A DNA stretch of 63,159 bases, the filler included, from Pelomyxa schiedti (taxonomy: Eukaryota > Protista > Evosea): assembly GCA_020536535.1 (NCBI GenBank). It is 7 parts of 7 records of this genome, joined end to end, with 100 filler letters (N's around TTAATTAATTAA, not from the genome) between each part and the next. Parts side by side here need not be neighbours in the genome. Positions count along the whole stretch, not along the records: positions 42,428 to 58,774 come from JAHLWZ010001145.1; 6 more parts are not named here. The stretch is one strand, 5' to 3'. Below the pieces are notes generated by a model, which searched no databases, was not told the origin of the DNA, and worked only from the letters and a program-made list of their open reading frames with translations. The position numbers and the translations under genes were made by a program. This document shows, in pieces, positions 42,428 to 59,224 of the stretch. Position 1 is the stretch's first letter, and every line of letters begins with the position of its first letter.

Positions 42428-43079
42428 CGCCGCTGATTTCATCCCGCACCTGCCACAACAACGTGGCGGCGTCGTCGGTGTGCATGCGAGCGCGAGGGCG
42501 CCGACTTGACCGCGGACCAGCTGGCCAACCACGTGGCATACAAGAGGTAGTGGCAGGCTTTGACCCAGCATAGGGGGTTTGGAAGCTTCCGTGGGTCGAT
42601 CAGCTCAGCTTTTCCAACAGTGTGATGTCCCATTCTCTGAACACCAGCACTCCACAGTCCGCAGGGGCGTCTGTGGTCGGCAACTCAGACATCACTCCAT
42701 TCCTCTTAGAGTTGAAGCATTCAGAGGCGGGCACATTGAAGTTGCTGAATGGATCACAAGAAACGTGGATGATGTCATCATCAAGTCGTTGATTGTGAAG
42801 CACTTCTACCCTGCAGAATTGGCGGGACACAGTGGAAAGCTTGCTGTGGTGAAGTGGTACTTTGGAATGTTTCCTGGGAGGAAACATCTGGTGATGGTCA
42901 GTTTCCGAAAAACAAGCAGTTATGAGTGCATTGAGGGGTGCAAGTGGCTTGTTGCACAGTTCCCATCACTCAAATTGAACTGTTTCAGTGGTTGTAGGCA
43001 CAAGAAGACTCTGAGATGGCTCCTTGAAAGTGGTGTTGTCATTTTTGGGGTACCGTATGTTGGGACACCTTCGTTCTAG
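42428..43079 (+). pseudogene. Degenerate ankyrin-like helical repeat fragment
   Basis: AFRGGHIEVAEWI, AGHSGKLAVVKW, KKTLRWLLESG. The 5' end is cut by the gap and the 3' end runs into short repeats. Confidence 0.55.
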
Positions 43080-43163
43080 AAAACTTTCGTTGCCAAAAAC
43101 TTTCGTTGTCGAAAACTTTTGTTGCGAAAACGTGCGTTGGTAAAAAAGTTCGTTCGGAATGTT

Positions 43164-44418
43164 TCAAGAAAAAAAAGAGGTGGTTCTATCGAGATCCACA
43201 AGGTTGTTGCCAGGAGCAAGGAAGCTGACAGAGGCAAAGGCAACACCTGACGACGCTTCAATCACTTTCAGGCTCTTCCTGTCTGATTCATCCACGGTAA
43301 AAACAAGTCCACCACCTGCAAGGTACCTCTTCACATGCTTTATCCCTCTCACGCCTACCACGGAGATGTCATCGCAATCCAGGATTTTAAGTACACTCCC
43401 ATCATCCTCCACTAGAACATTACATGGATAATAGACTGAGAACAGTGACTTGCTCAACTGTGACACAAGTGGGTGGTTGTACCAGCTTGGCACATGATAA
43501 AGAATCTCAGCAGTGCCATCAGACTTCACAGAAAAAACAAATCTGCCAGAGCCAAACACAGTGGCACAGAACTTCTCGACAATGAACACGTTTTGCCCAC
43601 GCTTGTTCTCCATCACAATGACAGACACAGGGCCGTCATCATACTTATTCTGTGGATCACAGACAGGTGGAAATGTGCAGGATGTTGTGCTCATCACCTG
43701 CAGTGTTTTTGTTTCACAGGTTTTGGCAACATCGATGATGACCAGGTCCGTGCTTGGAGTTTGTTGTTGACAGGTGATTAGCATCACTGCCTGTGATGGG
43801 ATTACGTTGCTCAGGTTGAAGGATTTGATAGTGCGACGGTAACAGTGAGGAAGTGGAATTGAAGCAGGCATTGCCCCCTTCTCTGCCAGGTTTGTGACAT
43901 GTAATCAGGAACTCGTCGTTCGCCGCACACACCGTTTCCAGCTCACAACCTAATTGCTTTCTTACAAGCCACACACCCCTTGGAGTCTCCCTCACCACGC
44001 ACAGGCTGGTCACTCCCAACAACAGCGGCAGCAGCTCAATCCTGACAGTGCACCACACTCCACCATCACCACTACGACCATTCCTGTCATTCACAGAACC
44101 CACAAGTGCATCCACGACAAAAACCCTCTTGGATTCTCGCATCCAGTCCCACAAGTGCCTCACCGCGTCAGTTCCCCCAAACACCCTCGCCAACTGCGAA
44201 TATCTCCCGCACCTCGCCGAGTGGGTTCCAATCAAAAGGGCACCAAATTGGTCGCATGCCCACTGGCCAGTCTGGAGGTCGAGTGCACCAAGCCACGTTG
44301 GTTTGGGAGTCGAAGTGGTTGTGGTAGTTACTGCTGGCTTGAATGTGGATGTGGTTTTGGTGGAGGTGTTGTTGAACCTTGGTTTTTTGTTCGTGGGTGG
44401 TGCTGGTTCGTCTGACAT
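43164..44418 (-). pseudogene. Subfamily E copy with frameshifting internal deletion
   Basis: Near-identical to 45102-46409, but the GVNRQW segment is missing at ~43900, splitting it into two ORFs. Confidence 0.8.
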
Positions 44419-44760
44419 CGTTTCTTTGTTCGTTGTTTCTTTCTTGTGGTTAATGCAACCTTTATTAAATAATCGCTACAGTCTTTACCAAAGCCGCTTG
44501 GGCCATTTTTGTTTTCAAGTTGTAACAAAGCCGTGTTACAAGTAGCGTTTTTCCCGCTTCGCCGAATCACATCAATTGATGATTGGTGATGTGATGATTG
44601 GATTTCCCCTACTTTTGGCACACAAACAAGCGTTTTTTGTTATCATGGCCAGCAATGCTCCTCCCTTCTCCCGTTTGTTCTATCAGCAGTCACAGTCACA
44701 TCACCACACACATTAGCAGAAAATAAGAGAACGATCCTTTTCCTCTTTACCGACTTCAAG

Positions 44761-45046
44761 CGGGCCCCCTCACTGTAATTAATTCCTCTAAAAAATTTTC
44801 TAGATGGAGTTGTTGCGTCACAGTTCAATGCAAGGTCGCACTGTATGATTTGGAAAAAAAAGTCCTTTCTCTGAACAAATCCTATGGAGTCACGCGTCAC
44901 AGTTCAATGCAAGGTCGCAACAACTCCACAAAGAAAGAAAAAAAATGCTGGGTGTTAATGGAATGATCACAGTCTTACTCAGGAAGCAGATCTCCACCAC
45001 CAGGGTGACCAAAAAATGAAAGAAAATAAAAGAGTGAGGGGGCCCG
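44761..45046. mobile_element. 286-bp MITE with 14-bp perfect TIRs and an 8-bp TSD (hAT-like)
   Basis: CGGGCCCCCTCACT at 44761-44774 and AGTGAGGGGGCCCG at 45033-45046. ACTTCAAG flanks both sides (44753-44760, 45047-45054). Internal 26-bp direct repeat at 44815-44840 and 44894-44919. Confidence 0.85.
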
Positions 45047-45101
45047 ACTTCAAGGGGTTTGTATTACAGTAGTCGAAGGGAGTGCCAGGTGTGTGGTTGT
45101 T

Positions 45102-46409
45102 TCAAGAAAAAAAAGAGGTGGTTCTATCGAGATCCACAAGGTTGTTGCCAGGAGCAAGGAAGCTGACAGAGGCAAAGGCAACACCTGACGACGCTTCAAT
45201 CACTTTCAGGCTCTTCCTGTCTGATTCATCCACGGTAAAAACAAGTCCACCACCTGCAAGGTACCTCTTCACACGCTTGATCCCTCTCACTCCCACCGCG
45301 GAGATGTCATTGCAGTCCAGGATGTTAAGTACACTCCCCCAGTCATCCGACGGTTGTGCACGAGATGGATAATAGACTGAGAACAGTGACTTGCTCAACT
45401 GTGACACAAGTGGGCGCTTGTACCAGTTCGGCACATGATAAAGAATCTCAGCAGTGCCATCAGACTGCACATAAAAAACAAATCTGCCAGAGCCAGCATG
45501 GAAAATCTCAACAATGAACACGTTTTGCCCACGCTTGTTCTCCATCACAATGACAGACACTGGCTCATCATCATCCTCCTCATTCTGGGGATCACAGACA
45601 GGTGGAAATTTGCAGCGCGTTGTGCTCACCACCTGCAGTGTTTTTGTTTCCCAGGTTTTGGCGATATCAATGACGACCAGGTCTGTTTGTTGTTGACAGC
45701 TCGTTAGCATCACTGCCTGTGATGGGATTACTTTGCTCGGGTTAATGGATTGGATGCTGCGGTAACAGCGAGGAAGAGGAATTGCAGCAGGCCTGGTCCC
45801 CTTCTCTGCCAAGTTTGTCACAAATAATGCAAGTGCGTTCCACCTCACCGACCACTGCCTGTTCACACCAGAGGAGACTCCAAAACATTCGCCATGATCT
45901 CGATTCAGGAACGTGGCGTCGTTCAGTGCCCACCCCATTTCCGGCTCACAGCCGAATTGCTTTCTTACAAGCCATATGCCCCTCTGGGCCTCCCTCACCA
46001 CACACAGGCTGGTGACTCCCAACAACAGCGGCAGCAGCTCAATCCTGACAGTGCGCAGCACTCCACGACGACCATTCCTGTCATTCCCAGAACCCACAAG
46101 TGCATCCACGACAAACACCCTCTTGGATTCCAACATCCAGTCCCACAAGTGCCTCACCGCGTCGGTTCCCCCAAACACCCTCGCCAACTGTGAATATCTC
46201 CCGCACCTCGCCGAGTGGGTTCCAATCAAGAGAGCACCAAATTGGTCGCATGCCCACTGGCCAGTCTGGAGGCCGAGGGCACCAAGCCACGTTGGTTTGG
46301 GAGTCGAAGTGGTTGGGGTTGTGGTAGTTACTGCTGGCTTGAATGTGGATGTGGAGGTGTTGTTGAACCTTGGTTTTTTGTTCGTGGGTGGTGCTGGTTC
46401 GTCTGACAT
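45102..46409 (-). CDS. Uncharacterised superfamily, subfamily E, intronless 435 aa
   Basis: CDQFGALLIGTHSARCGRYS, LWDWML, LLPLLLGV, GVNRQW, IDIAKTW, IEASSG. The N-terminal NKKPR is a possible NLS. Confidence 0.88.
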   Translation of the reverse strand: MSDEPAPPTNKKPRFNNTSTSTFKPAVTTTTPTTSTPKPTWLGALGLQTGQWACDQFGALLIGTHSARCGRYSQLARVFGGTDAVRHLWDWMLESKRVFVVDALVGSGNDRNGRRGVLRTVRIELLPLLLGVTSLCVVREAQRGIWLVRKQFGCEPEMGWALNDATFLNRDHGECFGVSSGVNRQWSVRWNALALFVTNLAEKGTRPAAIPLPRCYRSIQSINPSKVIPSQAVMLTSCQQQTDLVVIDIAKTWETKTLQVVSTTRCKFPPVCDPQNEEDDDEPVSVIVMENKRGQNVFIVEIFHAGSGRFVFYVQSDGTAEILYHVPNWYKRPLVSQLSKSLFSVYYPSRAQPSDDWGSVLNILDCNDISAVGVRGIKRVKRYLAGGGLVFTVDESDRKSLKVIEASSGVAFASVSFLAPGNNLVDLDRTTSFFS

Positions 46410-46679
46410 CGTTTCTTTGTTTGTTGTTGTTTTGTGGTTTTGGGTTTTTTTGTTTGTTGTGCAGGTTATTACAACGCTGAATTAAATAATTGCTCCGGTC
46501 TTTACCAAAGCCGCTTAGGCCATTTTTTTTCCAAGTTGCGACAAGGCGGTGTTACAAGTAGCGTTTTTCTCTTTTTTCGCCGAATTTCATCAATGATTGG
46601 TTTTCCCCTAAGGTCTCACTTGGTGTTGTTTGTTGCCAAGGGCTGTTGCCAGCGTTACCCCTCAACCTGAAGAGTAACA

Positions 46680-48254
46680 TTACCGGCACTGAAAATTGGA
46701 GAAAAATTCTCTGACCCAATACAAACACCTTGTTTTTTCTTGTTTAGAACTTGAATGGGCAAATGTCACAGTGGCAAATAGGCAGACAGTTTGATAGGAA
46801 TGGCGATACTCCTGCCTTGACTGAGGTATTACTTGAAGTTGTAGTACTAGGGGGAGTTCCCTTGCTAGCATCACCATGATCACCCTCAGTGGTTGTGGTT
46901 GTTGTTGTTGCGGTCATTGTGGCTGCAACTGGTGCAGGTGATTCATCACCTGTGGAAGATTCCTGAGTTCCGGAATGATGGGGTTCAGTGGAATGTTCCT
47001 TATGGTGCTTGTGTTCAGCTTTCTCGGCTTTTGGGTCTGATTCCGGCTCAGCTTTTCCAGTGCTGTGGGGAGCCTCTTCCTTGGACGGTTTCTTTTCAGG
47101 TTCCGGCTCGGTCACAGTAGTTGAGGTTGTTGAGGTTGTTGTGGTTGTTGAAGAAGTCGTTGTGGAAGTTGTAGTCGATGCGGAACCGGACTTGCCTGAG
47201 TCAAAGTAAGGTGAGTGAACAATTATTACACAGGACTCATACTTGCTTTGGCGTGGGTTTTACATAGTTTAGCATACTTCTCCTTTCCGAGCTTGTATTC
47301 AACTCGTTGCTCCCATTCCGGCGGGACTGTACTCCCATGGTCGGAAACAAGTTTGGCGATGTCAAGGTGATCCTTTAGTATTGCAGCAACCAGCGGAGTT
47401 GCTCCATCACGCTTCCGGGCTTTGTTTGTGTCAATAGAGGGTGCTTCCAGCAGTAACCGGACTATCTCCTTATGCCCCCATTCACAGGCAACAGTGAGAG
47501 GTGTTTCTTCATCACCGGTTGAGGCTTGGTTCACATCAATTGCGGGGCATGCTAGTAAAATCTTTACGACGTGGGTCCTTCCTTCCATGCAAGCACACCA
47601 TAGTGGCTTGGAGGCATTAACATCAACACCAGCAGTTTTAAGGAGCAGTTCAGCAACGTGGTCCTGGTGGCTGCAAATGGCCAGCGATAACGATGTCCAC
47701 CCTCTTGTGGTCTGGGCCTAAAATTATAATATCTCTTAGTATAGGAATAGCAAGTAAATATGGTCACATTTATATCTGGAACGTGGGGAGGGGCATTCAA
47801 TAGTGCCTTCACCACCTCCACATATCCAAACCTTGAAGCCACACACAGAGGGGTATACCTATGAAATATCTTTTAGTTCTTTCACTCAATGAAGAAAATA
47901 TTAGAGTCACAGGTTTTATAAAAGAAGTTAAGAACTTCCCCACATTGTCGGAAGCACAAAAAAACCAAAAGCAAACAACATATTGACACTGTGTGCTTAT
48001 GTATCTGCCAATACAAAAACAAGGAAAAAACCGCAAACCACAATTCACAATTCACACACATCCCACAATGGTTCCGGGGCTACACACCCGTCCGAGTCGC
48101 GGCCGTTCACGTCGAGCTTGTCGGCGCCATTCGCGGCGAGTATTTTCTTCACGGCGGCCACGTCGCCAGTGCGGCACGCCTTGTGCAACGACGCCAATGG
48201 CCCCCCGCTCAAACTCGTCGAACTACTACTAGCACTACTGCTGCTCGTGTTCAT
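46680..48254 (-). CDS. Ankyrin-repeat protein with Thr-rich, charged low-complexity tail
   Basis: LHKACRTGD, TPLCVASRFGY, ETPLTVACEWGH, ATPLVAAI across GT-AG exons. The exact last exon is uncertain. Confidence 0.85.
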
Positions 48255-48478
48255 CTGCTGTTGTTATTACTGTCGAGAAAATAATACACCACCCCACCCC
48301 CCTGTTATTATTGTCTATTTACCCAACGAATCGGTGTGGGTTGCTCTTTGGTGGTGTGTTAAAATAGCGGGAAAACCTGTGTTTGTTTTGTAAAACCGTA
48401 AAACGAAAAATGCAAGTTACGAGAAGTGAGTCGATTGGAGGAAAAGGAAATCACTTGTTTTTTTGGTGTTTTCGGGGC

Positions 48479-50017
48479 TTAGAGGAGCATGCGGGGTGTG
48501 TTGCGTTCGATGGCCTTGCGGAGGGTACCGGCGGCATCGGGGAACCTGTGCGTTACAGTTAGAGTTGAGAGTAGTAGGTGTTTGTGACTGTTTGTTGTTT
48601 GTACCTTGACAGGAGAATCATGGCGGCAATGACGTAGGGCTTGTGTCCGGCCTCCTTGTAGGTTTGGATGCGGTACCTCTCAAAGACGTCCTGAGAAACC
48701 TCACCAGTGCGGCAATTGACGCCGGTGATATCGGCTGGGAGGCAGTGCATGTACAGAGCGGATCCTGCCTTGGTTACTGCCATCTTCTCGGCTGTGCACT
48801 GCCAGTCAACGAAGCGAGCACTCTCTTCCAAACCTTTTTGGGGTGTAAGAACGGATTTCGTTGTAAGGGGAAGGAAACCTCTCTTTTCAAGAGCAGCCAT
48901 TTCTGGGCCACTGCCCTTTCCGGCATGAAGGAGCCTGCAGCGCTCCTGCATAATAGGGATTGGAGCCCAGCTCTTGGGGTAAACAACATCAGCACCAACG
49001 AATGCCTCACTCATGTTGTTGGAAATCGCGAACGAACCACCACTGGCAACGGAGTTCTTGCGAGCAATGTCAACAATCTCAGGGAGGAGATCGTATCCCT
49101 CGGGATGGGCTAAGACGATGTTCATGCCGAATCGGCTCATAAGTCCTGTTGAATTTAGTTAGTGGTAATGGCGTTGCAGGGTATGATACCAATGACGCCT
49201 TGTGGCACGGACAGTGGCTTGCCGTACGATGGGCTGTATGCCCAGCTCATGACCAACTTCTTTCCGCGAAGGTTTTCAACACCACCAAAGTGCTCAATAA
49301 GGTGAGACATATCAGCCATTGCTTGGGTGGGATGGTCCTCGTCGCATTGAAGATTTACGACAGCGGGGATTTGAGGAAGAACACCCTCATGGAAAGCCTG
49401 GGCTACGGTGTCGGAAACCTCCTTCTGATACCTATGTCCTATGACGGGACTGTTAGAAAATGGTGTGGAAAATTTGGGGAGAACAAAGTACCCTCGCCAA
49501 GGAAAATATCGTCCCTAATGCCGATTGCCTGGGTCAGGAAAGAAATCATGGCGGCAGTCTCGCGCACGGTCTCTCCGTGAGAAATCTGGGACTTGGTCTC
49601 GTCCATATCCGCTACTGAAAGACCCAGCATATCACAGGCAAAAGCGAAAGAGAACCGGGTGCGGGTGCTCTTATCCCTGAAGTTGGAAACAGCAAGACCA
49701 CCGTTGAACACTTTAGCGGAGATGTTAAGCTTGTACATCTCTTGGAGAATCTACATTAAGTGGGTTTATTCTGCAAAAGACCGTGCTCATTTCAAACAAT
49801 AAAAAAAGAGAAAATCACGTTACTGTATAAATAAATATTTTTGTTAAAAAAAAGAAAGGTTCATGAACCCCCAACGTACCATGTTGACCAACATTACAGC
49901 AGAAATTTCGTTGGGGGTCTTATCCCATGTGCGCAAGAAATCGTGGTTGTAAAGAGCGACGTCTCGGTTGGCCATCACAGCCTGCAGTTGTGCAACAAGT
50001 GCGTGTAACTTCTCCAT
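48479..50017 (-). CDS. ygeW: YgeW-type knotted carbamoyltransferase with ~5 introns
   Basis: FRDKSTRTRFS, KSQISHGETVRETA, GIRDD, NLQCDEDHPTQ, WAYSPSYGKPLSVPQG, VYPKSWAP, YMHCLPADITGV, YKEAGHKPYVIAAMI. These are YgeW-specific rather than OTC/ATC motifs. Confidence 0.93.
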
Positions 50018-50345
50018 TTATTGAAGCGTGTATTGGATCTTGGGATCTTCCGGTGTCGCTCTCGGCGTTCTGTTGCTTGCTGTTTTGTTTAAAACGTGAA
50101 AACGAAAAGAAAAGTTTAATTCAAATTTCCCTTCTAGTGCTTTCGCTTCCAAAAAAAGTTTGCAAGTCCTCAACCCAGCAGCGAAAGACATGCTCTGAGT
50201 TCTCCATCTCCACTAGATCCGCAGGGGGAATCCGGTCTGAGGATACAGCCCTCACCGGGAACTCAGATCTGGGGATCGATCATTGTTCGCTTGCGTAATC
50301 GGAACGATACGAACGTCCCCGGCATCTACACAGACCAACTACACC

Positions 50346-51225
50346 ATGAGTGGCAACCCATTCGTGCGATACGACCTCGACAAGGAAGACAACGACTACG
50401 ACACATTCCACCGGTTCTCGTCCTCGTCCTCGTCGTCATCATCGCCAACCACCGCATCCCATAATCACCACGCGCCTCACTTCCAAGTAGCCGAAGATGT
50501 ACGGGCTGTTACGGCGGCCACTGCGGTTGTCGGGGCCGGCCCGGGCCTGGGCCTGACCGGCTACGCGCACTCGGATGACAATTATGGGAACGACAACGAC
50601 GACGCCGTGGGCGGATCGGCGTCCCATAATCACGGTCACCACCACACGGGGGCCAGCCTAGCCATGGTCGAGACACAGTCGGGATTGTACCAACATTACC
50701 ACTGCGTTGAGAAAACTGACACACTGCAGGGAATATCCCTCAGATACGGTGTATCTGTATGCTATCTATCCTCCCTCAGTTACTTTATTTCTCATAGGAG
50801 TTTATTGTAAGATATACAATACAAATTATAATCAACGGACTTCTTTTTCTTCTTATTGTTGTTGTGTGGCGCAGCAGCACCATTTTCTTAATTTTACATC
50901 ACAGGTAGCCGTGTTGAAAAAAATGAATAAGCTGTGGTGTGACAACGATATATTTTCAAAGAAGCTTCTTGTAATACCAATCACCAAACCAAGCCTTGAG
51001 CAGCATGGTACCCAGCAGCCACAGCCCAACCAACCAACGCCAAAGACACAGCCCCATACACAAAGTGGCGATCCTCCACCTCATTCCACCAAACCTACAG
51101 CAGTAATGAATACCTCAATAGCACGCCACGTTGCTACCAATACAAGTAAGGCATTTGATCCACTGTCCATCAACTCGAGGTACAGTCACACTAAAAATAC
51201 CATCCCACTTACCCAAACCTTATAG
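50346..51225 (+). CDS. LysM-domain protein (LYSMD-like)
   Basis: YHCVEKTDTLQGISLRYGVS / VAVLKKMNKLWCDNDIFSKKLLVIP, split by an intron. No signal peptide. Confidence 0.88.
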
Positions 51226-51533
51226 TACATCATGAAGAAAAATGCTACTGAACACATGTAAAATTCACCATTCACACTTTAACCAATATCCTTTGGAATT
51301 TCACACCTCCACTTCAAACCAAAGATGAAGTTGCCAGAACTTAATCTGCCACTGTACAACAATAACCTCATTGTGACAATTCTTCACCACAAACCCCATG
51401 CTTGCATCTGATTGACCATAATCATCAATCTTCCAAGATCACTGTCATTTTTCTTTTCCTTTTTGGAACAAAAAAACCAACAACAACAAAAACCAAAAAG
51501 GACACGCAGATACGAACAGCATCGGTTCGGTTC

Positions 51534-54500
51534 ATGAAGGGCGTCGGTGTTGCCGCGACGACAACGACCGGGGTTCTACTACTCGTTGCTCTTCTTTTGG
51601 TGCATCTCAATGCAGTATGCGTGGGTGGGGGTGTCACGACGTCGCCGGGGTACTACTGCGTCGAGGACGGGTGGTGCGACGGGGTCGAGAACCGCGTCAA
51701 CTGCCCCAGGGACTGCCGGCCTGACGACGAGGACCAGGCCCGCGGTGCCGAGGGGGCTCTGTCCCGCGACGCCGAGGCCGCACTGTTGGACGCCTGGAAA
51801 ACCTCAAAGCAGTACTACGTCGACTTAATTGTGGGACAACTGGAGGTTGGTCCGTTGTTGGCTGCCGTGCTTAGTTTTAGTTGGTCGTATAAATAGACAC
51901 ACATGCACGTATATATGAATGTTACTCAAAATGTTGAATTTGTTAAACCAACCTTTGATTTTTTTTTCAGAAGGGGAACCCATACTCTCTGTATGACGCT
52001 GAATTGATGCTGAATAATTTTTGGTGTGGTGTTCTCTTGTGTAAAAAGTATAATCGACTGTCATACTAGCAAGTACATTCGAATGGTGGAGAACGATACA
52101 CTTCTAGGTGATTTGGCAGAGGTTCTTCTTTCAGCGGAACCATACCTGAATACTACATATGGTTACAAGGTCGTTGGGTTTCTCTTTCGGTTGGAATCAT
52201 ACCGTTTAGTAATACAAATATAGGAGTGGTTGTGTGAGACTCCAAACTGCCTTAATTGGCCGGCTTCAGCAGATCAAGAAGTTCTCCTTGTATCAAGCCA
52301 ATTTGTATACATACTAGCTGAAGTTTTATATGGAATAGCATCTATGGGCCTTCAAAACCAAGAACCTTTTTCGACTTTCGTATCTAAGTATGCCACGGTT
52401 GTATGGTTTGATGAACTGTACAAGTGGATACACCTCGGAACAACGTTTGCATTCCCTGTTCAGAAATCTGGTTCACCTCCTTCAGGCACGGAACTGGGAC
52501 TACATATTCTTCCTCGATTCTCAGCAGGCTTGGGGTTGGGGCTCAACCTGTTTCCCGCATAAACACTGGCCCTAGCAGTTACACATACCTGCGAGGTGGA
52601 ACCTCGGAGCTCACATTGGGAAATTGGCACCACGTTGTTGTATCCTATGATGGTTCAAACGTGAATTTCTATGTGAATGGGACCAGTCATACACGTCTAC
52701 ACATCCCAGGGATTATAGTTCCAGATTCCGGCTCGTTGTACATTGGGCGATATATCTCCGGTAGTTGGGCATATTTTAATGGTATTCGACTCTACTATTG
52801 TATCCTTTTCCCATTCCCAATGTTAGGCTCTATTGATGAAGTATATATCTACAATAGGGTCTTGTCACAAGAAGAGGTGGATTCCCGATATTCCGGTGAA
52901 GAAATCGATGCAGGACTGGCTGGGAGCTGGAAATTTGAGGATGATGAATCCTCTGGTGCTATATTAGATTCTTCTGGAAACAATAACACTGGTTCATTTT
53001 TGACCTTCATGGACTTTCGTCACACCAAGTCCTAGGTACTCCGCACAACACTGTTTATTTACCTTCCAATATGTGCTGGGCTGGAAAATGCCTTGGTTTC
53101 AATGGAATTGATAGCCATATTGTTATTCCCAACTCTGTCACTCTCAACATGGAAGGTTGGGCAGGGTTTACACTGGAAGCTTGGGTGAAGCCTGTTTGGA
53201 CGACTGTAGGAAGTATAATATGCAAAGGGTGGCAAAGTGGTTACTCTGGGTAAGTAGTAAAATACAGTTTAGCACTGAGTTACACAGTTGAAGGTTCGAG
53301 TTGCAGGTTTCAGCATCTCATACCTCCCCCGTTTCCGATACTGATATGTGGGTCATTTCTGGAGCAATTTATACACTTTCAACATACCGCATAGCTCCAG
53401 ATGTAATCAACATCAATGAATCTATTGCCCAGGTGAGTTCACCCGGAACTCAAGTAAATACTGATATCTTCCTCACCAGGTCTTCAGTGACTTCATTGAG
53501 ATGGGAAGAATTTTTATTGAGGGTAGGTTTACCTCCTCTCTTTTGACCGACTTCAAGGAAATGCGGTTGAGGTACTAAGAAATATTTACGCAATACGATG
53601 TTCATCTGCTCTAGGCTATCAACTTTGATCTAGGGGTGTGGGATGACTACTTTGACTACCGTTATTCAAATTACACTGAAGATGTTACCGAAGGTAAACC
53701 AACAAATTTCGTAACAGCGAAGTACTTTTAAGTTTTACTTCCGTCAAACAGGTTATAACCCGGCCGACCTTGGGATCCCAATAAAACCTGGAAAAAATGT
53801 GGGATGGGATATCAGTCACGCTAGACGCTTCTGTCACGTTTTCTATACATTTGATGAATGCAGAGCCTATCTCACATCAACATTTCCTGATAATATTTAT
53901 ATCGGCCTGACAAATGAGGTGAGGATTTTCATGCAAAAGAGGATGCTTATGTGTACACAGGTTATTTACCGTGTGTTCAACCGCAATTGGACTTACCCAC
54001 TATTCACGAACTTCATGGATGGCACAAATGGATGGTACCATGTAGATTACGATGGCCACTATTCTCATTTCCTTCAGGTACAGAGTTGATTATTCTGGGA
54101 GACCGCATTTTGGATATTCACCTTGGGAATTAAGTGGAAGCTATCCAACCGGCGGGTATGGACTATGGTCCAAGTACAATCAAGATACAAGTATGGTGTT
54201 GCAGTCACTTTGGAAGGCTTTGACCGTGCCATTTGTCTACGATGACACTGGCAAAGGCACCAAAATGACACTCTCTGCCGGAACCACTTGGGTGGGTTCT
54301 GGTATCTCTGGTGGAGGAATCCATGTTGAAAATACAGAGAAGCTATCATTTTCCCTTCCATTGTTCGGGGAGTCAGGAGCCTCTGTATCACTGTGGGTAA
54401 AGCTGGATAATGGTGATCCGCTCACTGTGGATTTACTTACTGTAAGGCCTTATGCTAATTCTAACCCGTTAACTGACGGGAATTAAGCTATGGCAAGGAA

Positions 54501-55300
54501 ATGGCTATACTGACTTTGTGCTTCTTAGGAAGAATCCATCTGGACAGGTTGGAGTTTCCGCTCTTCCAACTTTTATCCAAACATCCTTTCAGTTATGTGT
54601 ACTAGTAGAAAAGAACGATACCACGGTTGTTTATACTTGCTCTGTATCAACTAGTTCTCTCTTGGCCGGGGAGTGGCACCACATTGCCATCACTTCCAAC
54701 ACTTCACAGGTACCCATCACTTTCCTAATTCTTATTTAACCATTTCCGGCAAACACAGGTTCTTATCTACGTCGATGGAACTGTTGTTTCTGCTACCGGC
54801 ACCAACTCTGGAACATTTATTCCCCAATGGGTGCCTATTGTTTTCTTCTGGATAGGCTCCACTCACTGGACATGTGTGCTTTTTATTTATCTTCTCCTTC
54901 CCGTTTTTCCCTTTATTATTATTAACTCTTCCCAGATATGAATGGGACACTGGACAACGTGGCTGTGTATGACAGAGCCCTCACTCCCAGTGACATTGTT
55001 TCCCTCTATGAACTGACCAGTGACCCCAGTGACATTGGGGGCTGCATGGCCTGCTGGGGATTTGCCAGCCAAGTGAGCCCCAAGGACCCCTCAGTGACAC
55101 AGTTCTGGGGGGACAACTATGGGAGCTACATGATTGGCACCTCAGCCATTATGTTCCTGCCATCACTGGCTCAGAGGGAGAACAAGGGCAGAGGCAGTGA
55201 CAGTGAGGACAGCATAAGCATAAGCAGGAGTGTGCAGGCAAGTGCTCAGTTGCTCAGTGTGGTATTGGCTGCTTCTTTGTGTGTAATACTAGCTTGGTAG
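51534..55300 (+). CDS. Secreted, probably GPI- or tail-anchored protein with LamG/ConA-like domains and an uncharacterised helical domain
   Basis: Signal peptide, CDGVENRVNCPRDC motif, LamG motifs (WHHVVVSYDG..FYVNG..IDEVYIYNRVLS; FTLEAWVKP; WHHIAIT..LDNVAVYDRALT), GWDISHARRF and FTNFMDGTNGWY segments, hydrophobic C-terminus. Confidence 0.85.
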
Positions 55301-55373
55301 AATGTAGTAAGAGAGTGGATGATTTTGTTGAGGTTATAAGGCTGTTGTGAGTGTTAGATTATTCTCTTTTTTT

Positions 55374-57788
55374 TTACAGGATACAGCATTTCTTCTTTCT
55401 GGCAGGGTTGACTGCAGAGGGGGGAGAAAGGCATATTTTTATTGCCTCATTGAAGAGACCGGCAATGCCTTCTTGGGTGCGGGCACTGCATTCTGTACAG
55501 TAGCTTAGTTTTGAGAAGAAAAGTAGAAGGAGTTTTTATTACCATGATGTCGGACGCATCCTAGTTCTTTGGCAACTTTGAGGCCTTCGTCAGCAGTGAC
55601 AGGGTGTTGCTTCTTTTCAGCCAATAAAGCTGCTACAATCGCGGGATCGTTTCGAAGATCCTTTTTGGTGCCGACAAGAATTCTGTGTGCATCGGGGGAG
55701 TAATGCGTAATCTCGGGATTCCATTTTTCGCGGCAGTTGTCCAATGATGATGGGTTCACAATACTGTAGCAAAGGAAGAAAAGATCGGTGTGTGGGTAAC
55801 CTGTGTAATGAGAATGTTAGAGGAAATGAATAAAAGTGAAAATAATCAACTGAGTGGCCTCAAGCGGTCATATCTTTTTGGGAATTAGAAGACATTTAAC
55901 TAGGCATTACACATACTCTTCCTGTCCGGCAGTATCCCAAAGACCAACATTATAGCCCTTCCCGTCGTGCATTATATTGCATGAATAATTGTCAAATACA
56001 GTTGGGACATATTCTTCAGGAAAAGCATTTTTTGTGTAGGAGATGAGCAAGCATGTCTTTTGGAGGTGAGGAAATAAATAGACTATAAAAAGACAAAAGT
56101 ACCTTGCCTACAGCACCATCTCCAACTGTAACAAATTTGCGCACACCTGGTTTAGGTGCGGTATTTGGGATTATTATCTGGGCAGCACTTGCACTTAAAG
56201 GAGAGCCGGGTACGGCTGCGGCAGAACTAGCGGTGGTAGAGTTTGCTGGGGTAGCTGTTCTCTCAGCTGTGTCGGCCGTACTTGGTGTGGTTGATGAAGT
56301 AGTGGTTGATGTTGCTGCAGTGGTGGTCGTGCTATTTGTGTTGGTCGGCTCTGCCGTTTGAGAAGGAGTAGAGATGGTCGAAGATGCCGCTAATTCACTA
56401 TGAGTGACCAGTGGTGACACTGGTACAGCTAGAAAGAAGTGAGAAGTAAGAAGGGGGGGAAAGGAAAAAAATACGATATTTTGGTCTATCCCATACTGCC
56501 GCCCTTGTTACAACGTTGGCAAAGTATGTCTAGTTGGAGTCAATGCAGTCTAAAAAAATTGTGTTACCTTCTGTGAAGTATTATCAAATCGTTCTTCCCA
56601 ATTTGGGGGCATTTTGTCCTTCAACTGAGCAACTGTAAGAGGTTGGTGACACAAGGGACATTCTGTTGTGGCCACTGGTTCGAAGCATTCCCTGGCTCTG
56701 TTAGGCTGGAAAGTGAAGAGCTGAAACATACTTGCACGCCACTCCCTTGCAGAGGGGGCATTCCAGTGGAATCTTTGAAATCTTGTGGCAGAGGGCACAA
56801 GCAGGTGGTTCTCCAATAGCCTGCAACCGAAATTAATGGATTCGTATCAATTGTTCAGATATACCTGAGTCTGGGCTGCTGTCATTCCAGATGTCTCTGA
56901 TGTTGGTGCAGGAACAATTGCTGGTTGTGTGCCAGATGAAGGCGCATCTGGTTGTGACGTTGGAAGGGATGGAGTTGAAGTGGAGGAACTCCCTGTTTGT
57001 GGGGCTGATTGGGTTGTGGTGGGGGTAGTTGTAGATGGCTGGGTAGTCGACGCTACTGTAGGTTGGTTGGCAGCTGGATTCCCATTCAGGTACGCTGCTG
57101 CAGGGAATTTGGGTCTTTCCCAAGTAGATGTCCTTGTCACCAAGTTGGCATAATAAACTCGACCATTTGCAGGGTGTTTTCGTTCTTCCCAACCCTCTGG
57201 CAGTGGGTCCTGAGTAGCGGTTTGTAGAGCATTGCTTGATGGCGACGTAAGTTGTGGCTCAAGTAGTTTTGGTGTTGAGGTGCGGTGTTCAATTGAAGGC
57301 GTAGCAATACTGACAGGCGCATCAGAGGGAGCTGTCACAGAGGGGGTTGCTGCTGGAGCTGGAGTTGGAGTTGGAGTTGGCTCATTAGGCTGGGAGGGTG
57401 TTGTTGGTGTTGCTGGCGTAGCGGGAGTTGTTGTTGTTGCTGGTGGTACTGCCGTTGCTGGTTGTGTACTAGTTTGGGACTGCGTATCTCCTTGCGTTTG
57501 GGCCGCCAGTGCTTGGGCCTGGGCCTGGGCCTGGGCTTGCGCAGCAAGTGCTTGTTGCTTGGCCAATTGAGCCTGGGCCAGTGCTTGCTGGTAAGCAGCA
57601 ATTTGGGCAGGAGTTGCGAATATCTCTGCTGGTTGTGTGGGTCTTTCCCACGTTGAAGTGCGGGTGATGAGGTTGGCAAAAAACCTCTTGCCCGATATTG
57701 GATCCAGCCTCTCACTCCAACCAGGAGGCAGTGGTTGTGCAGGGGCTGCAGGAGTTGCTGTTGGTGCTGGTGTTGTTGCGTCACCCAT
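55374..57788 (-). CDS. WW-WW-RING-WW-Rac/Rho GTPase fusion with CAAX
   Basis: In-phase GT-AG splicing links [55 protein letters not shown] and [47 protein letters not shown]. Confidence 0.88.
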
Positions 57789-58439
57789 TGTTTTCGAAAG
57801 GTCTATACAATAAAATAAGGATCTGGGGGAAAAAAAAAACCAAAAGAAAAAAACATTAAATAGAAAAAAACCTAGGTCACTAATTGCTATAGGTGTATCG
57901 GCGCCTCTTAAATTTGGTGAAACAAAGGGGCCTTACTGAACCGCGAGTCAATTTAAAAAAAGGGGGTGCGAGATGAAGACAAACAAACAGCCGCTAGATC
58001 CAAAAAGAACCCAAACCACCACCGCATGCGACAAACTGCGACAAACAAACAGGGTGTTGTGTAGGTACCGGTGCCGGTGGTCGTCGTCGATTGGTTTGAT
58101 TTTTTTTTTTTCCTTCCCAGTTTTGTTTTGAACCGGTCTGAGTTGAAACAGCGGAAAGCATCACTTTCCCAAAATGGCCATCACCCCCCATTCCCATCAC
58201 CTGAATTTCCTGTCAGACTCATCTCATTGGCACCCCTTGCCGTCGTCCCATCATCGCGTGCCTGTAAAGCAAAACCATTCGGATCCTAGGACTTCTTTCT
58301 TCAACCCCAAAACCGTTTTCAAAAAAGTTTTGGGACGATCAAATCATCTTATCTTCAACAGACAATTCAATACAGCTGATGATGTGGTGGTGTGGTTCTG
58401 TTTTAGTTGTAGTTTCGTTGTGCCTGTTTGGGGGTGAGT

Positions 58440-58535
58440 CTTTTTTGTTCCCAGCTGACTGGGAGAAACACGACTCTGGTACCTATCACTATCCCATAAC
58501 CCCAGTGTTATGCAGCTCCCATCTGCCACATTTTT
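58440..58535 (-). pseudogene. Possible decayed Rho-family fragment
   Basis: VADGSCITLGLWD resembles Rho VDG..I.LGLWD. No other intact motifs. Confidence 0.3.
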
Positions 58536-59224
58536 ATATTACTGCCTTTTCTAACGAGCACCACCTGATGGTGCTTTTCAGTTTGGCTGGCATGGCCCCA
58601 ATATGACTACATTGAAGGATTGTCTGTTCAATCGGTGTCAGTGGGTGTGTGACTTCGCTATCTATTATGCTTAATAGTGAATAACCCATTCCCATACGTG
58701 TTTGATGTTATGCTGCACAAACTCACGTTTTCTATTTTTCAGCTATGATTCACGCACTTGGTCCGAACGTACCANNNNNNNNNNNNNNNNNNNNNNNNNN
58801 NNNNNNNNNNNNNNNNNNTTAATTAATTAANNNNNNNNNNNNNNNNNNNNNNNNNNNNNNNNNNNNNNNNNNNNTGGAAATGCTGCTTATGGAAATAAAC
58901 AAAATCATCAACTTAGAGAGGTGGTGTTTGTGAGAGAAAGCTGAGACAATACAGGTCCAGAAGTTGTTATTGTGGGACTTACGTTGATTGGCAGAGAAGA
59001 GGTAGATTTGTGTTCTTTTTGTTGTTGTTGGGCTCTCAACATAATCTCAGAGATTTAGATCTGTAGGATTAGAATTTCTAGTGAAATCTCATTTAACAAC
59101 TGAGCAGGGGAGTGATGCAAACGGTTCAGTTGCAAATATTTTCTCGCTTAATAAAAGCCTGCGGTTGAAGGCATTTTCCACTTTTTTTTTTCACCACTTT
59201 GCCTCATTTTGTTTGTCGAGCGTA

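What the first reader, a model, noticed from the sequence alone, without database searches (positions are those of the whole stretch)
55374..57788. Rac GTPase fused to three WW domains and an all-Cys RING-like finger
Seen: the ORF track shows only pieces, but phase-consistent GT-AG introns join them into one protein. The order is WW1, Gln/Pro/Thr linker, WW2, C-x2-C-x9-C-x2-C-x4-C-x2-C-x8-C-x2-C finger, WW3, Ser/Thr linker, then an intact Rac domain ending in basic residues and CCIL. Known: WW domains bind Pro-rich motifs and RING fingers recruit E2 enzymes. Multidomain Rho proteins are uncommon, and RhoBTB puts the GTPase first and has no RING. Inference: a prenylated, nucleotide-switched ubiquitin ligase or scaffold carrying substrate receptor, ligase and switch in one chain. 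I do not recognise this architecture.
Basis: partly seen in the sequence, partly recalled or inferred. Interest (0 to 1): 0.85.

Follow-up and report, generated by a model that had tools for sequence, protein, structure and literature searches.

The report
Amoeba Rac fused to WW-RING module
An anaerobic amoeba makes one real protein that joins a membrane-anchored Rac on/off switch to three proline-binding WW domains and a RING finger, a combination I found described nowhere, which may let the switch tag its own partners with ubiquitin.

Summary
This is a minus-strand, nine-exon Pelomyxa schiedti gene, deposited as KAH3732616.1 (685 aa) under the name 'small GTP-binding protein domain'. RNA contigs show all eight introns; single contigs join WW2, the finger, WW3 and Rac. 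It models as a RING/U-box fold, but only at moderate confidence and below Pfam cut-offs. Rac's nucleotide, switch and CaaX motifs are intact.

New context: WW-Rac fusions form a family (Mastigamoeba, Mastigella, metatranscriptomes) whose Rac domains are one clade. Only three P. schiedti paralogues carry the RING, with all eight cysteines and an internal intron shared. The ancestral job therefore needs no ligase; the RING is most simply a Pelomyxa addition.

Ligase activity is untested. E2-facing residues are partly canonical, the linchpin is His or Ser, and the WW domains lack the PPxY-pocket histidine. Best reading: a membrane Rac-WW scaffold with a weak or heterodimer-dependent E3 (0.45). 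A non-catalytic RING is nearly as likely. Nothing yet supports nucleotide control of the RING. I found no description of this architecture, but small GTPases joined to ubiquitin-ligase parts recur elsewhere. New variant of a known kind.

The parts
57803..57871 (-). 5'-UTR intron (69 nt, GT-AG)
   Evidence: joint 57802/57872 in one X2 contig, short side 21 nt
56865..57788 (-). Coding exon 1 (aa 1-308): WW1, Ala/Gln/Pro/Thr linker, WW2, Thr/Ser/Pro linker
57639..57731 (-). WW1 (aa 20-50)
   Evidence: Pfam WW
57111..57203 (-). WW2 (aa 196-226)
   Evidence: Pfam WW
56732..56820 (-). Coding exon 2: first five cysteines of the finger
56568..56691 (-). Coding exon 3: last three cysteines of the finger and first half of WW3
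56649..56799 (-). C4C4 RING-like finger, Cys316-Cys352, split by the 40-nt intron 56692-56731
56482..56612 (-). WW3 (aa about 365-395), split by intron 56530-56567; begins directly after the RING
56475..56529 (-). Coding exon 4: second half of WW3
56103..56428 (-). Coding exon 5: Thr/Ser/Ala linker and Rac beta1 plus P-loop
55917..56056 (-). Coding exon 6: Rac switch I to G3
55851..55873 (-). Coding exon 7 (23 nt): switch II
55543..55800 (-). Coding exon 8: G4 and Rho insert helix
55374..55492 (-). Coding exon 9: G5, last helix, polybasic stretch, CCIL, stop
55422..56144 (-). Rac-type GTPase domain (aa about 493-670) over exons 5-9
55377..55400 (-). Polybasic stretch and CCaX-type prenylation box
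   Evidence: CCaX lipidation reviewed in PMC9868626

Best explanation
A single-chain, membrane-anchored Rac signalling scaffold that in Pelomyxa gained a C4C4 RING acting as a weak or partner-dependent E3 ligase. Step 1 (shown): one transcript encodes WW-WW-RING-WW-Rac. Step 2 (from established Rho biology and intact motifs): the CaaX Cys is geranylgeranylated, the next Cys may be palmitoylated, and the Rac domain cycles GDP/GTP under ordinary GEFs and GAPs. Step 3 (inferred): the three WW domains on long flexible tethers bind Pro-rich partners, probably not classical PPxY motifs, and hold them at the membrane patch where this Rac sits; this is the ancestral, RING-free function. Step 4 (inferred, weakest): the RING packed against WW3 recruits an E2 and ubiquitinates WW-bound partners or the protein's own Rac domain, possibly as a dimer with a paralogue. 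Control would come from co-localisation, not allostery.
For: RNA joints and bridging contigs. G1, switch I, Trp56-equivalent, Gln61-equivalent, G4, G5, insert and CaaX intact; exon 6 best matches Rac1. WW-Rac proteins form one Rac clade, 100/99 and 96/95. Three paralogues keep all eight Cys and the intron inside the finger. The finger region is 77% identical to the nearest paralogue, like WW and Rac (69-85%), against 35-46% in linkers, while about half to three quarters of conserved codons carry silent changes. Fold searches return RING/U-box proteins throughout (best Z 6.3-6.4, RNF213 RING). The paralogue finger aligns without gaps to the BARD1 RING. Leu/Phe in the first knuckle and Pro plus aliphatic in the last match Not4 Leu35 and Pro75 by Cys register. 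C4C4 RINGs of CNOT4 and TMEM129 are E3s (PMC4024746). His linchpins occur in active E3s Doa10 and Rad16 (PMC7667886).
Against: No activity data. Model confidence is only pLDDT 65-75 from three sequences and Z is below 8. No Pfam RING model reaches its cut-off. Not4 Ile37/Glu38 positions are His/Lys in all three paralogues, and the linchpin is His, His, Ser; His is much weaker than Arg. The central helix is four residues long. The same Cx2C-x4-Cx2C core occurs in cellulose synthase and TFIIH p44 RINGs, known mainly as interaction modules (own knowledge). Some RINGs are monomeric and inactive (PMC6487577). Most family members lack the RING.
Confidence: 0.45

Rival explanations
1. The RING is a non-catalytic interaction module. 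It dimerises the protein (homo- or heterodimers among the three paralogues) or props up WW3, raising WW avidity. The protein is a pure Rac-switched scaffold.
For: Non-canonical E2 face. Nearest C4C4 look-alikes include the cellulose synthase finger. Closest solved RINGs by sequence include BARD1, the non-E2-binding partner of BRCA1 (role from own knowledge). RING-free orthologues exist.
Against: First-knuckle hydrophobe and last-knuckle Pro-aliphatic are kept in all three paralogues. No extended flanking dimerisation helices are predicted.
Confidence: 0.37
2. One reading: GTP loading of the Rac domain switches the RING on or off within the chain, making a nucleotide-gated ligase. This is a special case of the E3 reading.
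For: All parts are on one chain, and Rac1 ubiquitination depends on its activation (PMC13236570). The Lys147-equivalent (Lys638) is present.
Against: WW3 and about 95 low-complexity residues of variable length separate RING and Rac. The Rac surface is highly conserved between members with and without a RING. No interface was modelled.
Confidence: 0.15
3. The finger is not a RING but another binuclear or paired zinc module (FYVE-like, double zinc ribbon).
For: The Cx2C-x4-Cx2C core is shared with FYVE-type fingers (own knowledge). Weak DZR, AN1 and ribbon hits appear in Pfam. Zinc geometry was not measured.
Against: No FYVE or LIM domain appears in the top 50 of three fold searches. No basic RRHHC lipid motif. 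Spacing is colinear with BARD1 and RAD18 RINGs.
Confidence: 0.1
4. Gene-model artefact: separate WW and Rac genes joined by prediction.
For: No single contig spans WW1 to the stop.
Against: Bridging RNA contigs from WW2 to the Rac end, WW1 and WW2 in one exon, two paralogues with the same order, intron-free metatranscriptome WW-Rac ORFs.
Confidence: 0.01

Closest known systems
Rac subfamily of Rho GTPases
   Same: All G motifs, Rho insert, Trp56-type residue, polybasic CaaX end; about 60% identical to animal Rac/Cdc42 domains.
   Different: A 490-residue N-terminal extension with three WW domains and a RING; its own clade of WW-Rac proteins.
RhoBTB / Dictyostelium RacA
   Same: Multidomain Rho linked to ubiquitin ligation (Cul3 complexes).
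   Different: GTPase is N-terminal, BTB domains follow, the ligase is in trans; no BTB here, and the Rac domain does not group with RhoBTB rows.
TRIM23/ARD1 (own knowledge; paper not held)
   Same: A RING E3 and a small GTPase in one chain.
   Different: ARF not Rho; C3HC4 RING with B-boxes and coiled coil; no WW and no CaaX.
NEDD4-family ligases (ITCH, SMURF, WWP)
   Same: Several WW domains beside a ligase domain; best PDB sequence matches of WW2.
   Different: HECT not RING; C2 domain not prenylation; their WW domains keep the His that binds the PPxY tyrosine, which is Leu or Val here.
POSH/SH3RF1
   Same: RING plus Pro-rich-binding modules in a Rac-dependent scaffold: the same parts list.
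   Different: SH3 not WW; binds Rac-GTP in trans rather than being fused to it.
C4C4 RINGs (CNOT4, TMEM129, cellulose synthase, TFIIH p44)
   Same: Eight Cys ligands, four residues between ligands 4 and 5.
   Different: Shorter loops (9 and 8-9), His-Lys after the second Cys, below Pfam cut-offs.

Membership tests
Rho family, Rac-like | G1-G5 motifs with catalytic Gly12 and Gln61 equivalents | tested here: met
Rho family, Rac-like | Rho insert helix | tested here: met
Rho family, Rac-like | Polybasic region and CaaX box | tested here: met
Rho family, Rac-like | Groups with canonical Rac1 in a tree | tested here: inconclusive
   forms its own WW-Rac clade; deeper branches are weak
Rho family, Rac-like | GTP binding, hydrolysis, prenylation | not testable with these tools
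   needs biochemistry
RING fold (C4C4 type) | Eight conserved ligands with RING spacing | tested here: met
   three paralogues
RING fold (C4C4 type) | RING/U-box topology | tested here: met
   predicted only, pLDDT 65-75, Z up to 6.4
RING fold (C4C4 type) | Pfam RING model above its curated cut-off | tested here: not met
   best E 7e-4, 19.9 bits against 27
RING fold (C4C4 type) | Cross-brace binding of two zinc ions | not testable with these tools
RING E3 ligases | Hydrophobic E2-binding face in both knuckles and helix | tested here: inconclusive
   Leu318, Val344, Pro350, Leu351 present; His320-Lys321 atypical
RING E3 ligases | Arg linchpin after the last Cys | tested here: not met
   His, His, Ser; not required in all E3s
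RING E3 ligases | Stimulates ubiquitin transfer from an E2 | not testable with these tools
   needs assay
Group I (PPxY-binding) WW domains | WW fold with both Trp, the strand-2 aromatic pair and final Pro | tested here: met
Group I (PPxY-binding) WW domains | His of the tyrosine pocket | tested here: not met
   Leu or Val in all three; no listed family WW has His there
RhoBTB | N-terminal Rho followed by BTB domains | tested here: not met
NEDD4 family | C2 and HECT domains | tested here: not met

The most novel reading that the evidence does not exclude
A prenylated Rho GTPase that carries its own substrate receptor and E3 ligase, with ligase output gated by its nucleotide state: a self-contained GTP-switched ubiquitin ligase, built in the Pelomyxa lineage on an undescribed Archamoebae WW-Rac family.
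Probability: 0.15. Interest if true: 0.8.

Novelty: new variant of a known kind. Interest (0 to 1): 0.55.

Why it matters
Rho GTPases almost always act as bare domains that bind effectors in trans, and WW- or RING-type ligases regulate them from outside. Here evolution fused these parts, apparently in two steps: WW-Rac across several anaerobic amoebae, then a RING in Pelomyxa. That gives a natural with/without-RING comparison and a small construct for asking whether a GTPase can gate a tethered ligase. The WW domains with an altered ligand pocket may define a new specificity. The organism is hard to work with, so the payoff is mainly biochemical and evolutionary.

Tried and rejected
Alternative acceptor in intron 2 (34 nt, giving Cx4C): in frame, but all three RNA runs use the 40-nt intron. 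Separate genes: rejected by bridging contigs. Exon shuffling of the RING as a symmetric module: not supported, because the finger ends on the same exon as the start of WW3 in all three paralogues. Donor of the RING: not found; a finger-only search gave only the Pelomyxa proteins and exon 3 against 1.84 billion proteins gave one true homologue; both searches are insensitive for so short a domain. Other hits (P0001, P0003, P0005) are repeat noise. Internal PPxY ligands: none. Literature searches on Pelomyxa, Mastigamoeba, Archamoebae or Entamoeba with Rho/WW terms found no description; subscription papers are not covered. TRIM23 and cellulose-synthase papers were not held. I did not build or search a joined spliced model: I searched exon by exon by reference, then used the database's own deposited proteins by id.

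Full report
Source. The piece 42428-58774 is contig JAHLWZ010001145.1 (16,347 nt) of Pelomyxa schiedti GCA_020536535.1, a free-living anaerobic amoeba.

Observation. On the minus strand, nine exons separated by GT-AG introns of 38-50 nt give an open frame of 685 codons. Single-cell RNA contigs from one sample show all eight introns. Records of 1526 and 1517 nt carry WW2, the finger, WW3 and Rac together. WW1 is in the same exon as WW2. Contigs do not give strand or expression level. I searched the model exon by exon by reference and left the joined step out. A search with exon 3 found a homologue, which led to the deposited protein KAH3732616.1; all nine exons match it exactly. It is annotated only as a small GTP-binding protein.

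Rac domain. G1, Phe28, switch I, Trp56, Gln61, G4, the insert and G5 equivalents are intact, and the chain ends in basic residues and CCIL. Exon 6 best matches Rac1 and exon 8 matches Cdc42 and Rac1 equally. A final Leu favours geranylgeranylation, and in brain Cdc42 the second Cys of a CCaX box is palmitoylated (PMC9868626). Lipidation here is inferred.

Family. Two more P. schiedti genes have the same order: KAH3761029.1 (619 aa) and KAH3760583.1 (440 aa). A second transcript with the finger-WW3 junction is visible in the same RNA sample (loose ends). Three-WW Rac proteins without the finger occur in Mastigamoeba balamuthi, Mastigella eilhardi and several environmental assemblies; two-WW versions occur as well. 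The hosts of the environmental members are unknown. All these Rac domains form one clade (100/99, 96/95). The three finger-bearing genes group only moderately (87/88, 78/81), but share the intron inside the finger and several others. Mastigella belongs with Pelomyxa in Pelomyxidae (PMC10711303) and its one detected member lacks the finger. The simplest history is an older WW-Rac fusion followed by a single RING gain and duplications in Pelomyxa; losses elsewhere are not excluded, and sampling is thin.

Finger. All eight cysteines are invariant in the three paralogues. The region is as conserved as the WW and Rac domains (77% against 35-46% in linkers) although silent sites have diverged heavily, which indicates purifying selection. 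No Pfam model passes its cut-off, but RING models lead. The paralogue's finger aligns without gaps to the BARD1 RING, with Gly where BARD1 has His and an extra Cys upstream, the pattern expected of a C4C4 variant. Language-model neighbours include NOT4-type and cellulose-synthase fingers at scores under 0.9, so leads only. AlphaFold2 gives a hairpin and short helix at pLDDT 65-75. Structural searches return RING and U-box proteins throughout, best RNF213 RING at Z 6.3-6.4 and rmsd 2.1-2.4 over 50 residues. These scores are modest, and a shared fold shows no function. I put the RING fold at about 0.85-0.9.

Is it a ligase? Mapped by Cys register onto yeast Not4 (PMC4431670), Leu35 and Pro75 are kept (Leu318, Pro350), Ile37 and Glu38 become His and Lys, and Arg78 becomes His, or Ser in one paralogue. 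His linchpins occur in active E3s but are much weaker than Arg (PMC7667886). C4C4 RINGs can be ligases (PMC4024746) and some RINGs are inactive alone (PMC6487577). The evidence is balanced: about 0.45 for a weak or partner-dependent E3, 0.37 for a non-catalytic module.

WW domains. They resemble ITCH/NEDD4L, Prp40 and Pin1 WW domains about equally. The His that flanks the PPxY tyrosine in ITCH (PMC8190631) is Leu or Val here, and no listed family WW has His there. Classical PPxY binding is therefore unlikely and the ligand is unknown. WW3 starts 17 residues after the last Cys in two paralogues and 19 in the third, so RING and WW3 may act as one unit.

Mechanism. Shown: one transcript, domain order, intact Rac motifs, conservation. 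Inferred: membrane anchoring, GEF/GAP cycling, WW recruitment of Pro-rich partners, and RING-dependent ubiquitination of those partners or of the Rac domain. Nucleotide gating of the RING has no direct support, since a long variable linker separates the two and RING-free members have an equally conserved Rac.

Comparison and novelty. It is a Rho-family member by sequence. It is not RhoBTB or NEDD4-like. It works like POSH plus Rac in one chain, or like TRIM23 (own knowledge) with a Rho instead of an ARF. Small GTPases fused to ligase parts recur: Atlas clusters pair Ras-family domains with RINGs, and Rho-U-box-BTB and Rho-F-box proteins appeared in my searches. No WW-RING-Rho protein outside P. 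schiedti was seen among the best 8000 candidates of two searches, and paper searches found no description. Verdict: real, apparently undescribed, lineage-restricted; a new variant of multidomain Rho GTPases; interest 0.55.

Noticed in passing
window 48479-50017 (-): Intron-containing gene for a YgeW-type knotted carbamoyltransferase (NCBIfam E 2e-68 and 2e-39 on two pieces; 402 aa). A bacterial-type enzyme in a eukaryotic gene; possible lateral transfer.
   Followed up: partly
window 43160-44587 and 45098-46601 (-): Tandem duplicate (84-87% DNA identity) of a gene with no Pfam hit. One copy is a 435-aa ORF; the other lies in two overlapping ORFs of 234 and 235 aa, a possible frameshift or intron.
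   Followed up: partly
window 58342-58774 (+): Spliced plus-strand transcript (introns near 58478-58581 and 58644-58742, one X3 contig), divergent from the Rac gene and cut by the contig end; no gene is called there.
   Followed up: no
window 51534-55300 (+): 954-aa laminin G-repeat membrane-type protein, convergent with the Rac gene; the two stop codons are only 73 nt apart.
   Followed up: no
window 50346-51235 (+) and 46744-48254 (-): A LysM protein (231 aa) and an ankyrin-repeat protein (394 aa).
   Followed up: no
P0138 (Mastigamoeba balamuthi m51a1_g9329) and P0059: RhoBTB-like proteins with a U-box inserted (Rho, U-box, BTB): a second Rho-ligase fusion in the same group of amoebae.
   Followed up: partly
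P0068, P0031, P0157: Other multidomain Rho proteins: Rho with 2OG-Fe(II) oxygenase and F-box; ubiquitin-vWA-Rho; Rac joined to a C-terminal Ras-like domain.
   Followed up: no
window 55610, 56340, 56788, 56965, 57748: Single-base differences between RNA contigs and the assembly. Read by eye, 56788 (a finger Cys codon) and 56340 are silent and 56965 changes a linker residue.
   Followed up: partly
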